The notes under the pieces are model-generated. The model had not been told where the DNA came from. It worked only from the letters and a program-made list of their open reading frames with translations, and made no database searches. This document shows, in pieces, positions 28,232-47,998 of a DNA stretch of 64,000 nucleotides. Position 1 is the stretch's first letter. Every line of letters begins with the position of its first letter. Made by a program: the position numbers and the translations under genes. This DNA is from Macrostomum lignano (Eukaryota). The DNA lies in the NCBI GenBank assembly GCA_002269645.1, contig NIVC01000344.1, positions 1 through 64,000 of the forward strand. The letters are read 5' to 3'.

Positions 28232-29382
28232 CTAAATCTGGCACATCATAGCTGACTGCTGCTTCAGTAGCTGAAAAAGCAGAAACAGAGGCAGTACAGC
28301 GATCAGCCAGTTTGCGACCCTGTTATTGCTGGCGTCCTTGGTCTCGGCGTCGGGTCGTTTGGGGCCTATGGGCGGCTGCTGTGGTGGTAGCGCTGGAGTG
28401 AAATTAGGAAGATTAAAAGGGCGTATTGTACTCGAATTCGATTTAGGTTGAAGCGCTACGTAGCTGAGATATAGTAAAGTGCATCCAGTGGGGTGAAGGC
28501 AGACAGTGACGTGGTGAGACAGTGAGACGGTGGGTGAGTAATTGAGTAAGACGGTAAAAGAGCCAGAGAGTGATATAGTGATACAGTGTGAGACAGTGAG
28601 ACTACGAGACTGATTAAGATAGCGGGGAAGAGAGACGCAGTCAGAAGGGACTTAGACAGTGCGACGATGGGAGACAGAGTGAGACTGTGCGACGGTGGAA
28701 TGAGACACACTTCCATTGCAAGGCTTTTTCGAAAAATTACTGACAAAATAATTCACTTACTGGCGTTGGAGCCCGGAGGTACAGTAGGCGGAGGCGGAGG
28801 CGGAGGCGGTGCGGGTTTCGGTTTGCCTGAAATTTGAGTTGCGTGTCTTGCTGGAGAGACATGAAACTGGCTGGAGAGGGCTGGAGAGGGCTGGAGAGGC
28901 TGGAGGGGCTGGAGAGGGCTGGAGAGGACTGGAGTGGGCTGGAGAGGGCTGGAGGGGCTGAAGGGGCCGGAGAAGGGCTGGAGAGGGCTGGAGTGGGCTG
29001 GAGAGGGCTGGAGAGGGCTAGAAAGGGCTGGAGAGGGCTGATGAGGGCTGGAGAGGGCTGGAGAGGGCTGGAGAGGGCTGGAGAGGGCTGGAGAGGGCTG
29101 GATAAGGGACTGGAGAGACGGAGAGATGGGAGGAAGGAGTATCGGATAAATGGAGAGCAAGGGATACGAGTACGTTGGGATTTGGACTGGGTCAGGCGGA
29201 AAGTAGGATGTGGGGAGTTGGAGCGGGTCTGGGCAAGACGGGTATTTGACTGGAGTTGAGTAGACACGCAGCAGATCCGAGTTCAGTCGGCCTGACTTAC
29301 TTTTCTTGGAAGATGAACACGCCTCACTGCAGAGCAGTGCTGCAGCAAGACAGCTCAGAAGCAGCAGCCATCGGACAGACAT
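28232..29382 (-). CDS. Mini-gene A: 102-aa signal-peptide, Pro-rich, GPI-signal-like protein (3 exons)
   Basis: Exons 29382-29301, 28826-28761, 28392-28232, all joined in phase 1 (GTAAGT donors, YAG acceptors). MSVRWLLLLSCLAAALLCSEACSSSKKSKPKPAPPPPPPPPTVPPGSNATLPPQQPPIGPKRPDAETKDASNNRVANWLIAVLPLFLLFQLLKQQSAMMCQI*. An alternative in-frame acceptor 24 nt upstream of exon 2 is possible. Confidence 0.75.
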
Positions 29383-29879
29383 CTTCAATGCAGAAAAAGC
29401 AGCAGAAGCGCTTTGTACTCGAAAGCTTGAGATGTCAAATTCGACTGACGACAAAAGTTTTCTGCAAAGTCGGTCTTCGCTCCGAGGGTGAGACCAAACG
29501 TTTGCGAGCCTCTTAGCTGCTGAGCTGCGGCCACAGACAGTTCTGTACAAAGCGATTCCTGTCTCGCTAGCAGCGTCAGAGGGACGACGATTGTCTATGG
29601 CAAAACGGGCCATACGGGCACGCGGAGCCGTGCACTTTTATTGCAGTGCAAGGTTTGACGGTTTTCAAGTGTAACAGCTTTTTTAAGAGAATCTTTGAGC
29701 CTGCAGTCTTAATCAGTCAAAGGATCATCTAAAGGAGTTCTTGAACCTGAGAGAAGGAAATCGATTCACAAAAGTCAAGTTTTTTATTTAGTTAGGAATG
29801 CCAAAGGGTCCTTGAACTGCCAACTTATTCGGATCGGCAGTTATTTTCCTGCAGTCGAAAAGGCAAAAAATTGATCCAA

Positions 29880-45900: not shown

Positions 45901-46771
45901 AGCATAAATAAGCCTACCTCCGGCTGAAGCTTAAACCGGCCGGGCGAATCCTGCTGCATCACCGCGACCCGCAACGCTCCAAATAATTAGGTTCTTGTAT
46001 AATATGCATTAGCCGCATGTCTTCTCCATCTAAAGACTAATTTGTCACTCGCTTGCATGGGTACTTCAGGCGCGTTGTTTCATCATTGAAAATGCAGACT
46101 TGGTCACTTGGTTACTAAAGCAAACTGTGCAAAACACTTCTGCAGCGAAACACTTATAATAGGGTCTCAGTGTTAAAATTATAACTCTATTCAATAATGG
46201 CCGCTGTGGTTGCGCTTGTTGCATTGTTGCGCAAAAACGGGGTTGGAGGCTCGGTTACTGCTTGGGGCAAAGCATTTTGGCCATATTTGCCTTAAATACC
46301 GTTTGATTTGCGGATATACATTGGGGTAATTCAGACTGTTAAAGTGAATTTCCTTGAACCCAATTAAATTGGGTTTCTCTTGCACTGCAAAAAAGTGCAC
46401 GGCTCCGCATGCCCGTATGGTTGGTGTTTTGCCATAGACAATCGTAGGCCCTCTGACGCTGCTAGAGAGACAGGAATCGCTTTATACAGAACTGTCTGTG
46501 GCTGCAGCTCAGCAGCTAAGAGGCTCGCAAACAAGAATTATGGGCACATTTATTTTTAGTATATAGAAAATTATCAGCCTCAAGCAACCCAGCGGTTCAA
46601 GCTGGTACTTGTCTATAAATGAAACCGAAAAAATAGAGCTTCTGGCTATCGAGTTACGTTTTTCATCCGCAGAGAGAAGACCGACTTTGCAGAAAACTTT
46701 TGTCGTCAGTCGAATTCGACATCTCAAGCTTTCGAGTTCAAAGCGCTTCTGCTGCTTTTTCTGCATTGAAG

Positions 46772-47998
46772 ATGTCTGTCCGATGGCTGCTGCTTCTGAG
46801 CTGTCTTGCTGCAGCACTGCTCTGCAGCGAGGCGTGTTCATCTTCCAAGAAAAGTAAGTCAGGCCGACTGAACTCATATCTGCTGCGTGTCTACTCAACT
46901 CCAGTCATATACCCGTCTTGCACAGAGCCGCTCCAACTCCCCACATCCTACTTTCCGCCTGACCCAGTCCAAATCCCAATGCAATCGTATCCCTTGCTCT
47001 CCATTTATCCGATTTTCTTCCTCCCATCTTCCTGTCACCCCTGTCTCTCCAGGCCCTTATCCAGCCCTCTCCAGCCCTCTCCAGCCCTCTCGAGCCCACT
47101 CCAGCCCTCTCGAGCCCTCTCCAGGCCTCTCGAGCCCTCTCCAGCCCTCTCCAGGCCTCTTGAGCCCTCTCCAGCCCTCTCCAGGCCTCTCGAGCCCTCT
47201 TCAGCCCTCTCCAGCCTTCTTCACCCCTCTCCAGCCCCTCCAGCCAGATTCATATCTCTCTTGCAAGACTCAGCTCGCAACTCAAATTTCAGGCCAACCG
47301 AAACCCACACCTGCTCCGCCGCCTACTGCAGCTCCGGGGTCGAACCCTAGTGAGTGAATGTTTTTTTGTAATTTTTCTAAAGGCCAAAACCGTTTGTCCT
47401 GTAACAGTAGTGTCTTATGGTCGCACAGTCTCACTGTCTCGCTTTAGATAGAATGCCAACAGCAGAAGGAGTGAATTTGACCTAATTTAGGCAAATCAAA
47501 TACTTACTTCGCTGTTGGTCGCAATTCTGCTTATTTATCCTTCGACTGAACGATGCTAATCATTTTCTCGCGATTTCTGTGAAATAGTTTCAAAGCGTTT
47601 GGGTGATCAGATCAATCACCTATTCTGAGTGGGATTTGCTTCTAGTTCCGACAAAAATGTCAAAAGTACAGTTTCTGGCTGAAATGTAGAAGAACGAATA
47701 GAAATGCAACCGACATCGCTTTCTCATTTCTCGGTGGCCTCATGCTACTGCGCTCGGTATTCTCTGCTTGATCGTAAAATTTCACACGATTCGAATACAG
47801 CGCGCCCATTTGAATTTTCCTAATTTCACTCCAGCTGCAAATCTAGCACCGCCACCCAAAAATCCTCCCTGGAGACCCAAAGCCGAGACCAAGCACGCCA
47901 GCACTAGCAGGGTCGCAAACTGGCTGATCGCTGTACTGCCTCTGTTTCTGCTTTTTCAGCTACTGAAGCAGCAGTCAGCTTTGATGTGCCAGATTTAG
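46772..47998 (+). CDS. Mini-gene D: 100-aa paralog (3 exons)
   Basis: Exons 46772-46853, 47293-47349, 47835-47998. ...[79 protein letters not shown]. Confidence 0.75.

What the first reader, a model, noticed from the sequence alone, without database searches (positions are those of the whole stretch)
28232..47998. Hidden family of ~100-aa mini-proteins predicted to be lipid-anchored at both ends (N-terminal Cys plus GPI-like tail)
Seen: four intact spliced paralogs, invisible in the ORF track. Each has a signal peptide ending S-E-A or G-E-G at residue 21, an invariant CSSSKK, a 50-70 aa Pro/Thr-rich spacer with no Cys or folded domain, and a conserved hydrophobic end. Established: Hedgehog acyltransferase (HHAT/Rasp, MBOAT family) N-palmitoylates secreted proteins whose signal cleavage exposes an N-terminal Cys followed by basic residues (Hedgehog; Drosophila Spitz). 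From memory the Spitz junction is VEA|CSSRTVPKP, close to SEA|CSSSKKSKPKP here; verify this. Inference: these could be palmitoylated, GPI-linked polyproline rods with no receptor-binding domain. They might act as membrane tethers, surface-coat or mucus components, HHAT decoys, or lipopeptide signals shed by the neighbouring ADAM. I know of no described family with this architecture, but I could not search.
Basis: partly seen in the sequence, partly recalled or inferred. Interest (0 to 1): 0.88.

Follow-up and report, generated by a model that had tools for sequence, protein, structure and literature searches.

The report
Chimeric flatworm mini surface-protein genes
Four small, already annotated genes of the flatworm Macrostomum lignano encode about 100-residue proline-rich proteins. 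They were assembled from the front end of a WSC-domain gene and the last exon of the neighbouring ADAM protease gene, and anchoring by lipid at both ends fits the sequence but is unproven.

Summary

They are not hidden. The window is the first 64 kb of Macrostomum lignano contig NIVC01000344.1, and all four are called in the RNA-seq-derived GenBank annotation as hypothetical proteins. The cluster recurs on two other contigs, always beside an ADAM gene. Nothing similar turned up outside this species.

The main new result is that the genes are chimeras:
- Promoter, exon 1, intron 1, the exon 2 position and the start of intron 2 are homologous to a 130-aa WSC-domain gene on another contig.
- The end of the last intron, the last exon and the 3' flank are homologous to the last exon of the adjacent ADAM.

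This explains why the ADAM is next door.

The end modules are 92-98% identical between paralogs, synonymous sites included. The spacer evolves almost neutrally.

The predicted mature N-terminus meets published HHAT substrate rules. The tail looks like a GPI signal, but a short transmembrane anchor is not excluded. Dual lipidation remains a hypothesis, at roughly 10%.

The parts
28232..29382 (-). Mini gene A, 3 exons (29301-29382, 28761-28826, 28232-28392), 102 aa. Identical to annotated PAA78457.1/PAA85135.1.
32899..35039 (-). Mini gene B, 4 exons (34958-35039, 34198-34260, 33417-33470, 32899-33059), 119 aa. It is the most divergent copy, with a GEG|C junction. It is closest both to the WSC parent in exon 1 and to the ADAM around the candidate omega site.
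42190..43510 (+). Mini gene C, 3 exons (42190-42271, 42572-42637, 43362-43510), 98 aa. Identical to annotated PAA85137.1. A TGC>TGA change removes the last three residues (CQI).
46772..47998 (+). Mini gene D, 3 exons (46772-46853, 47293-47349, 47835-47998), 100 aa. Called in GenBank at the same coordinates.
40819..40869 (+). Orphan 51-bp remnant of exon 1 with an in-frame stop (MSVR*). No downstream exons.
5275..26838 (+). Complete ADAM gene (signal peptide, prodomain, Reprolysin domain with [12 protein letters not shown], Disintegrin, ADAM_CR, EGF-like). It has no classical transmembrane segment or cytoplasmic domain. An intron holds a 10-kb satellite of 33-bp units.
26674..26838 (+). Last ADAM exon, encoding [54 protein letters not shown]. 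With about 87 nt of preceding intron, it is the source or sister of the mini genes' last exon (74-76% nucleotide identity).
27161..28058 (.). Inverted repeat (arms 27161-27350 and 27869-28058, 91% complementary). Together with the two tail exons it forms an imperfect palindrome of about 1.9 kb joining the ADAM 3' end to the 3' end of gene A.
44444..44620 (+). Decayed fragment of an ADAM 5' exon (aa 71-127, 69% identity) downstream of gene C. Similar fragments lie downstream of gene D at 51137-51316 and 51708-51779.
28869..29117 (.). 10-bp minisatellite (CCCTCTCCAG)n in intron 1 of gene A. The same array is in intron 1 of B (34308-34567) and D (47045-47245), and a shorter run is in C (about 42430-42530).

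Best explanation
These are four tandem and inverted copies of a young, Macrostomum-restricted chimeric gene.

Origin. The 5' half comes from, or is shared with, a small secreted WSC-domain gene. It comprises the promoter, 5'UTR, exon 1 (signal peptide plus C-S-S-S-K-K), intron 1, the small exon 2 and the start of intron 2. The 3' end comes from the last exon of the adjacent ADAM metalloprotease. It comprises the end of the last intron and the last exon, which encodes a short stalk and the membrane-anchor signal. All the introns involved are phase 1, so the joined exons stay in frame.

Product (inferred). The protein enters the ER and loses its signal peptide after residue 21. It is displayed on the cell surface as a disordered, basic, proline-rich peptide of 50-70 residues. 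It is held there by the ADAM-type C-terminal signal, more likely a GPI anchor than a short transmembrane segment.

Evolution. The two targeting modules are kept almost identical between copies, while the displayed spacer drifts in sequence and length.

Function (inferred, low confidence). It is a surface-coat or spacer peptide of whichever cells use the WSC-type promoter.

Shown: the gene models, their transcript-derived annotation, the chimeric homology and the pattern of conservation. Inferred: the cleavage site, the type of anchor and the function.
For: - Gene models and annotation match exactly. The GenBank annotation of this assembly was built only from RNA-seq and transcript assemblies plus TransDecoder (PMC5730564).
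- A profile search of 1.84 billion representative proteins returned four hits: the family itself, the ADAM (tail, residues 769-819), the WSC protein P0008 (residues 1-31) and one spurious repeat protein.
- 5' homology: 81-83% nucleotide identity to the WSC locus over about 215 nt spanning the 5'UTR, exon 1 and intron 1, plus an upstream block of about 85 nt. The end of intron 1 and the first 110 nt of intron 2 also match at or above the best of 300 shuffles.
- 3' homology: 74-76% identity to the ADAM over the last roughly 90 nt of intron plus the last exon.
- The 3' ends of the ADAM and gene A form an inverted repeat, and ADAM exon fragments lie next to C and D.
- Exon 1 is 92-98% identical between paralogs and the tail 94-98%. 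Flanks and introns are mostly 63-88% (range 37-94%), and spacer exons mostly 55-84%.
- Synonymous divergence (pS) is 0-0.11 in the end modules and 0.3-0.5 in the spacer for most pairs (A-C 0.07). Spacer pN/pS is 0.5-1.2.
- At least 10 complete copies on three contigs, plus an eleventh running off the end of L004, have intact ORFs. All length differences are multiples of three.
- There is no Pfam domain, and AlphaFold finds only the two terminal helices.
- The hydrophobic core of the tail has a summed Hessa score of about -0.4 over 15 residues and +1.8 over 17. This resembles the Thy-1, CD59 and DAF signals and not glycophorin A (-1.7 and -2.8) (reference sequences recalled from memory).
Against: - No expression pattern, protein evidence or orthologue outside M. 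lignano was found.
- SignalP and NetGPI could not be run, so the cleavage site and the anchor type rest on rules of thumb.
- 7-10 residues (KQQSALVCQI) follow the hydrophobic core, beginning with a Lys as in a stop-transfer sequence. This favours a transmembrane reading.
- The very low synonymous divergence in the end modules could reflect gene conversion rather than selection on the protein.
- The near-neutral spacer is also what a functionless chimera would show.
- The direction of transfer (ADAM to mini gene, WSC gene to mini gene) is inferred from the age of the domains and is not demonstrated.
Confidence: 0.6

Rival explanations
1. After cleavage, Cys22 is N-palmitoylated by the flatworm HHAT and the C-terminus receives a GPI anchor. 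The proline-rich peptide is then pinned to the outer leaflet at both ends.
For: - CSSSKK meets the published HHAT rules: Cys at position 1, Ser tolerated at position 2, Lys at positions +4 and +5 after the Cys.
- The Cys22 codon and the small -3/-1 residues are kept between the mini genes and the WSC parent despite synonymous changes (TGT/TGC, GGG/GGC). Exon 1 pN/pS is 0.2-0.5.
- In the WSC parent, Cys22 is a ninth cysteine outside the 8-Cys WSC domain.
- The tail resembles a GPI signal.
Against: - Per the Resh review, an N-terminal Cys alone is not sufficient. Of 87 human proteins with a predicted N-terminal Cys, none apart from the Hedgehogs is a shown substrate.
- Other cleavage sites compatible with the -3/-1 rule exist (after residues 23, 24 and 25).
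- The presence and co-expression of HHAT in M. lignano were not tested.
- The GPI reading is itself uncertain.
- The motif is simply the last six codons of a borrowed exon.
Confidence: 0.1
2. Same origin and topology, but the tail is a short single-pass transmembrane segment (VANWLIAVLPLFLLFQLL) with a 7-10 residue cytoplasmic stub, in both the ADAM and the mini proteins. On this reading there is no GPI anchor.
For: - A Lys immediately follows the hydrophobic stretch, and 7-10 more residues follow that.
- ADAMs are normally type I membrane proteins (general knowledge).
- AlphaFold models residues 66-100 as one helix.
Against: - The core is only 15-18 residues long and contains Pro and Gln. In the ADAM version it contains Thr, Thr and Ser.
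- The summed hydrophobicity is marginal.
- Small residues (NASAS, ASTS, DAS) sit at the expected omega distance.
- The last three residues are dispensable in gene C, and the Cys is replaced by Trp in the ADAM.
Confidence: 0.3
3. The genes are transcribed but functionless by-products of segmental duplication around the ADAM locus. On this reading they are a chimeric open reading frame that has simply not yet decayed.
For: - The family is restricted to one species in all the databases searched.
- Spacer pN/pS is near 1.
- The region is full of duplicated fragments, minisatellites and transposon remnants.
- A dead exon-1 remnant is present.
Against: - All copies examined on three contigs keep intact frames (10 complete, one running off its locus), with only in-frame indels.
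- Exon 1 and the tail are far better conserved than the adjacent introns and UTRs.
- Four paralogs persist with spacer synonymous divergence of 0.3-0.5 between the older copies.
Confidence: 0.15
4. The membrane-bound form is a precursor. The basic proline-rich peptide is released by a protease or a phospholipase and acts as a soluble effector, for example as an antimicrobial peptide.
For: - The mature part is basic (net +4 to +6) and 20-35% proline.
- Conserved targeting signals with a fast-evolving mature part are the pattern seen in secreted effector peptide families (general knowledge).
Against: There is no dibasic processing site pattern, no homology to known peptides, and no data on release. 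The ADAM adjacency is explained by ancestry.
Confidence: 0.07

Closest known systems
Small GPI-anchored mucin-like or proline-rich surface peptides (mammalian CD24 and CD52, plant arabinogalactan peptides, trypanosome procyclins and TcMUC mucins)
   Same: The layout is the same: a signal peptide, a short low-complexity spacer rich in Pro/Ser/Thr with no fold, and a C-terminal hydrophobic anchor signal. In TcMUC, as here, the two signal ends are conserved while the middle varies (from general knowledge).
   Different: There is no sequence homology. Ser and Thr content is modest. The spacer is basic. The anchor type is unproven. None of those families has a predicted N-terminal Cys followed by Lys residues.
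HHAT/Rasp substrates (Hedgehog, Drosophila Spitz)
   Same: The predicted mature N-terminus starts with Cys, followed by small residues and basic residues at +4 and +5. This meets the published substrate rules. Spitz Cys29 is the documented acceptor.
   Different: There is no Hedgehog or EGF signalling domain. No acylation has been shown. The motif comes from a borrowed exon of a WSC-domain gene.
M. lignano ADAM encoded next door (P0010 / PAA88086.1 and copies)
   Same: The last exon is homologous, as are the last roughly 90 nt of the preceding intron and the 3' flank. The tails are [21 protein letters not shown] in both.
   Different: The mini proteins have none of the ADAM domains.
M. lignano WSC-domain protein P0008 (PAA77628.1, Mlig013254.g1)
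   Same: The promoter block, 5'UTR, exon 1, intron 1 and the start of intron 2 are homologous. Compare MSVRRLLLLSCLAATLLCGLGCLSSKK with MSVRWLLLLSCLAATLLCGEGCSSSKK.
   Different: The WSC gene continues into a WSC-domain exon and has no hydrophobic tail. The mini genes lack the WSC domain.
Chimeric new genes made by exon shuffling or partial duplication (for example Drosophila jingwei)
   Same: A new reading frame was assembled from parts of two unrelated parental genes by recombination within introns of matching phase.
   Different: Here only the two targeting signals were combined. The product is almost all linker, and it was then amplified into a local family.

Membership tests
HHAT/Rasp substrates | Signal peptide cleavage exposes Cys as the first residue | tested here: inconclusive
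   The -3/-1 residues are S/A or G/G in all copies and G/G in the WSC parent, and the h-region ends at residue 17-18. However, sites after residues 23, 24 and 25 also satisfy the rule, and no signal peptide predictor was available.
HHAT/Rasp substrates | Second residue is not Lys, and a basic residue lies within about 4-6 residues after the Cys | tested here: met
   The sequence is C-S-S-S-K-K in all four copies. The rules are taken from PMC8061759 and bioRxiv 10.64898/2026.08.27.744591.
HHAT/Rasp substrates | Amide-linked palmitate on the N-terminal Cys, dependent on HHAT | not testable with these tools
   This needs labelling experiments. An HHAT orthologue in M. lignano was not searched for.
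Hedgehog / EGF-ligand families | Hedgehog N-terminal signalling domain or EGF domain | tested here: not met
   No Pfam family matches P0001 or P0003. The AlphaFold model has no folded domain.
GPI-anchored proteins | N-terminal signal peptide plus small residues at omega to omega+2, followed by a short polar spacer | tested here: met
   The candidate omega regions are DAS-NNRVAN (A), AST/STS-RVAN (C, D), NSA/SAS (B) and NAS-ASRVAN (ADAM), each ahead of the hydrophobic core.
GPI-anchored proteins | Marginally hydrophobic C-terminal stretch that runs to or near the C-terminus, with no cytoplasmic domain | tested here: inconclusive
   The 15-residue core WLIAVLPLFLLFQLL has GPI-like marginal hydrophobicity. 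However, 7-10 further residues (KQQSALV(CQI)) follow it.
GPI-anchored proteins | Release by PI-PLC, or detection of the anchor | not testable with these tools
   Experimental.
ADAM family | Reprolysin, disintegrin and Cys-rich domains | tested here: not met
   The domains are present in the neighbour P0007 but absent from the mini proteins. Only the last exon is shared.
WSC-domain proteins | WSC domain (PF01822) | tested here: not met
   P0008 has the domain at residues 39-119. The mini proteins have no match.

The most novel reading that the evidence does not exclude
The borrowed exon-1 motif (signal peptide | C-x-S-S-K-K) is a portable N-terminal palmitoylation tag in Macrostomum, used by both the WSC protein and the mini proteins. 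Combined with the ADAM-type GPI signal, it would yield proteins lipid-anchored at both ends to the same membrane leaflet. I do not recall that combination being described, and I made no literature search for it.
Probability: 0.1. Interest if true: 0.8.

Novelty: new variant of a known kind. Interest (0 to 1): 0.45.

Why it matters
It is a clean, datable example of a new gene family built from nothing but two borrowed targeting signals: a secretion exon and a membrane-anchor exon. Almost everything between them is linker, and the new gene was then amplified locally.

It also points to two things worth testing in a flatworm where transgenesis works. One is an ADAM protease that appears to lack a normal transmembrane and cytoplasmic region. 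The other is a short N-terminal Cys motif that meets the known rules for Hedgehog acyltransferase. If the dual-lipid idea held, it would extend HHAT substrates beyond signalling ligands.

Tried and rejected
- Expression data. I searched full texts for the gene identifiers and tried the supplements of five M. lignano papers (none were held as text for the last). The only hit was an unrelated gene sharing the prefix (Mlig012955g1, an EF1-gamma-like gene).
- Transcript contigs. An exact-protein look-up returned only the three genome contigs and no RNA assemblies.
- Spitz N-terminus. I could not verify the sequence directly. The Miura 2006 and Hardy & Resh 2012 papers are not held, a text search for the peptide string found nothing relevant, and the PDB Spitz chains shown in alignment start at the EGF domain. 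Only indirect consistency was obtained.
- Spliced B and D proteins in the profile search.
- Hit P0006 from the profile search. I rejected it as a translated tandem repeat.
- Relatives of the WSC protein. A homology search with P0008 returned only P0008 itself, so the N-terminal Cys motif could not be compared across species.
- CaaX-type prenylation of the C-terminal Cys. I rejected this because the Cys is third from the end, is lost in gene C and is Trp in the ADAM.
- A bacterial-type lipobox. I rejected this because the organism is an animal and the sequence context does not fit.
- A literature search for natural GPI-anchored ADAMs found nothing useful.
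Full report
**What is there**

A back-translated CSSSKK pattern hits the window four times (29302-, 34959-, 42253+, 46835+) against 0.11 expected. 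Reading the surrounding sequence and joining exons at GT-AG sites gives four intact reading frames of 98-119 aa:

| Gene | Strand | Exons | Length |
|---|---|---|---|
| A | - | 29301-29382 / 28761-28826 / 28232-28392 | 102 aa |
| B | - | 34958-35039 / 34198-34260 / 33417-33470 / 32899-33059 | 119 aa |
| C | + | 42190-42271 / 42572-42637 / 43362-43510 | 98 aa |
| D | + | 46772-46853 / 47293-47349 / 47835-47998 | 100 aa |

All introns are phase 1. A 51-bp remnant of exon 1 carrying a stop codon lies at 40819-40869.

**Organism and annotation**

Protein A is 100% identical to Macrostomum lignano PAA78457.1/PAA85135.1, and protein C to PAA85137.1. The window is bases 1-64000 of contig NIVC01000344.1 of assembly GCA_002269645.1, with identical coordinates.

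Gene D is called at exactly 46772-47998. Gene B is called at 33044-35028 as a 67-aa product, a length that fits my four exons read in another frame (71+63+54+16 = 204 nt; my inference). The 119-aa form of B is annotated on two other contigs.

The GenBank annotation of this assembly was built solely from RNA-seq with StringTie, TACO, a de novo transcriptome and TransDecoder (PMC5730564). The splice junctions therefore rest on transcripts. The family is not hidden. It is annotated as hypothetical proteins and is uncharacterised.

The cluster recurs on NIVC01000689.1 and NIVC01000202.1, in the same order and next to the same ADAM gene. All copies examined are intact: 10 complete, plus one that runs off the end of its locus. 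M. lignano is a recent polyploid, so some of these copies are homeologues.

**No relatives elsewhere**

A word-indexed search of 5.8 billion proteins found only the three M. lignano clusters. A full HMMER profile search of 1.84 billion representatives found four proteins:
- the family itself;
- an 820-aa ADAM, matching residues 769-819;
- a 130-aa WSC-domain protein, matching residues 1-31;
- a translated tandem repeat, which I discard.

Pfam finds nothing in the mini proteins. AlphaFold gives only two terminal helices, at residues 3-21 and 66-100, with mean pLDDT 62.

**The genes are chimeras**

*3' module.* The adjacent ADAM maps completely to 5275-26835 on the + strand. It has a signal peptide, a prodomain, a Reprolysin domain with an intact [12 protein letters not shown] motif, Disintegrin and ADAM_CR domains and an EGF-like region. 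It ends with a Thr-rich stalk and then [29 protein letters not shown].

That last exon (26674-26838), about 87 nt of the intron before it, and the 3' flank are homologous to the last intron end, last exon and flank of every mini gene. Identity is 74-76% over the exon and 89-93% in a flank block. The 3' ends of the ADAM and gene A face each other as an imperfect palindrome (inverted repeat I12). Decayed ADAM 5' exon fragments lie beside C (44444-44620) and D (51137-51316).

*5' module.* The WSC gene is P0008 (PAA77628.1), on contig NIVC01000732.1. It shares the following with the mini genes:
- a promoter block of about 85 nt;
- the 5'UTR, exon 1 and the start of intron 1, at 81-83% identity over about 215 nt;
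- the last 60 nt of intron 1 and the first 110 nt of intron 2, at or above the best of 300 shuffles.

Its exon 1 encodes MSVRRLLLLSCLAATLLCGLGCLSSKK. Its introns are also phase 1.

The simplest history is recombination within intron 2 joining WSC exons 1-2 to the ADAM's last exon. A Pro-coding run then expanded in exon 2, and the new gene was amplified locally. Gene B is closest to both parents (GxG junction; NSASAS before the tail) and is probably the oldest form.

The direction of transfer is inferred. WSC and ADAM are ancient domain families, while the mini gene is species-restricted.

**Pattern of conservation**

| Region | Nucleotide identity between paralogs |
|---|---|
| Exon 1 | 92-98% |
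| 75 nt encoding the hydrophobic tail | 94-98% |
| Flanking UTR and intron | mostly 63-88% (range 37-94%) |
| Spacer exons | mostly 55-84% (A and C share an identical exon 2) |

Synonymous divergence (pS) is 0-0.11 in the signal peptide and tail and 0.3-0.5 in the spacer for most pairs (A-C 0.07). Spacer pN/pS is 0.5-1.2.

The end modules are therefore held or homogenised at the nucleotide level, and the displayed part drifts. All length changes stay in frame. It follows that the 'invariant CSSSKK' among paralogs says little by itself.

The older comparison with the WSC gene is more informative. Exon 1 pN/pS is 0.2-0.5. The Cys22 codon differs synonymously (TGT versus TGC), and the -3/-1 residues stay small. 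In the WSC protein, Cys22 is a ninth cysteine outside the eight-Cys WSC domain.

**Anchors**

*N-terminus.* The h-region ends at residue 17-18, and S-E-A or G-E-G gives small residues at -3/-1, so cleavage before Cys22 is the most likely site. Sites after residues 23-25 also fit the rule, and no predictor could be run.

The published HHAT rules require an N-terminal Cys, a second residue that is not Lys, and a basic residue 4-6 residues after the Cys. CSSSKK meets them. The same review notes that an N-terminal Cys alone is insufficient. It also notes that none of 87 human candidates other than the Hedgehogs is a shown substrate.

Spitz is palmitoylated at Cys29 and its soluble form starts at Met45. 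This agrees with the recalled CSSRTVPKPRSSISSSM. I could not read the Spitz sequence itself.

*C-terminus.* Small residues sit 7-10 residues ahead of a 15-residue core (WLIAVLPLFLLFQLL) that contains Pro and Gln. Its summed Hessa hydrophobicity is -0.4 over 15 residues and +1.8 over 17. These values resemble Thy-1, CD59 and DAF signals and are far from glycophorin A (the reference sequences are from memory).

Against a GPI anchor, a Lys and 6-9 further residues follow the core. The terminal CQI is lost in gene C and becomes WQL in the ADAM, so it carries no specific signal. I put GPI at about 55% and a short transmembrane anchor at about 35-40%.

**Interpretation**

The best-supported reading is a young chimeric family encoding a secreted, membrane-tethered, disordered, basic proline-rich peptide. 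Its two targeting signals were borrowed from a WSC gene and the neighbouring ADAM.

The adjacency to the ADAM reflects ancestry, so it gives no independent support to a protease-substrate relationship. Dual lipidation is compatible with every sequence rule I could check, but it is untested. I estimate it at about 10%.

A functionless transcribed chimera cannot be excluded (about 15%). The intact frames in all copies examined and the exon-specific conservation argue against it.

I found no expression data.

Noticed in passing
window 5275-26838 (+); last exon 26674-26838: The ADAM metalloprotease has an intact zinc-binding motif but no classical transmembrane segment or cytoplasmic domain. It ends in a Thr-rich stalk, NASAS, a 15-residue weakly hydrophobic stretch and 10 more residues. 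It may be a GPI-anchored ADAM. A literature search for natural GPI-anchored ADAMs found nothing relevant.
   Followed up: partly
window 12991-23058: A 10-kb satellite of 305 nearly identical 33-bp units (99% matches, GC 0.30) sits inside an intron of the ADAM gene. It creates two spurious ORFs of about 3370 aa.
   Followed up: partly
L006 10001-11711 (NIVC01000732.1): The 130-aa WSC-domain protein P0008 has a predicted mature N-terminus CLSSKKEK. This gives it an odd ninth Cys followed by Lys residues, so it would itself meet the HHAT substrate rules. No relatives were found in 5.8 billion proteins.
   Followed up: partly
window 31326-32195 (-): A gag-like ORF (PNMA-type domain plus CCHC zinc knuckle) lies between mini genes A and B. 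It is probably a remnant of an LTR retroelement.
   Followed up: partly
window 52330-52842 (-): This ORF encodes the last transmembrane helix (NPVIY motif) and the C-terminal tail of a rhodopsin-family GPCR. The Pfam 7tm_1 match is weak.
   Followed up: partly
window 28869-29117, 34308-34567, 42797-43149, 44164-44322, 47045-47245; L006 10390-11390: 10-bp minisatellites (CCCTCTCCAG and CTATGAGACT types) fill the introns of every mini gene. A related GTCTCACTGT array fills intron 2 of the WSC gene. Such arrays may have provided the recombination substrate for the fusion.
   Followed up: no
window 25140-26560: A complex tandem array (periods 14, 57, 70, 171 and 315) lies in the last ADAM intron, just upstream of the shared tail exon.
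   Followed up: no
window 58908-60171 (-) and 9035-9676 (+), 51299-51730 (+): Long simple-repeat tracts give spurious ORFs (PLPCPLPPYPLPTPP-type and SVCL-type repeats). The SVCL array follows an ADAM exon at about 8.9 kb and also follows the ADAM fragment at about 51.3 kb.
   Followed up: no
supplement of PMC12896417, file 6: The locus-tag prefix Mlig012955 is shared by an unrelated gene (g1, an EF1-gamma/glutathione transferase-like gene). Identifiers with the same prefix therefore do not imply the same gene family.
   Followed up: no
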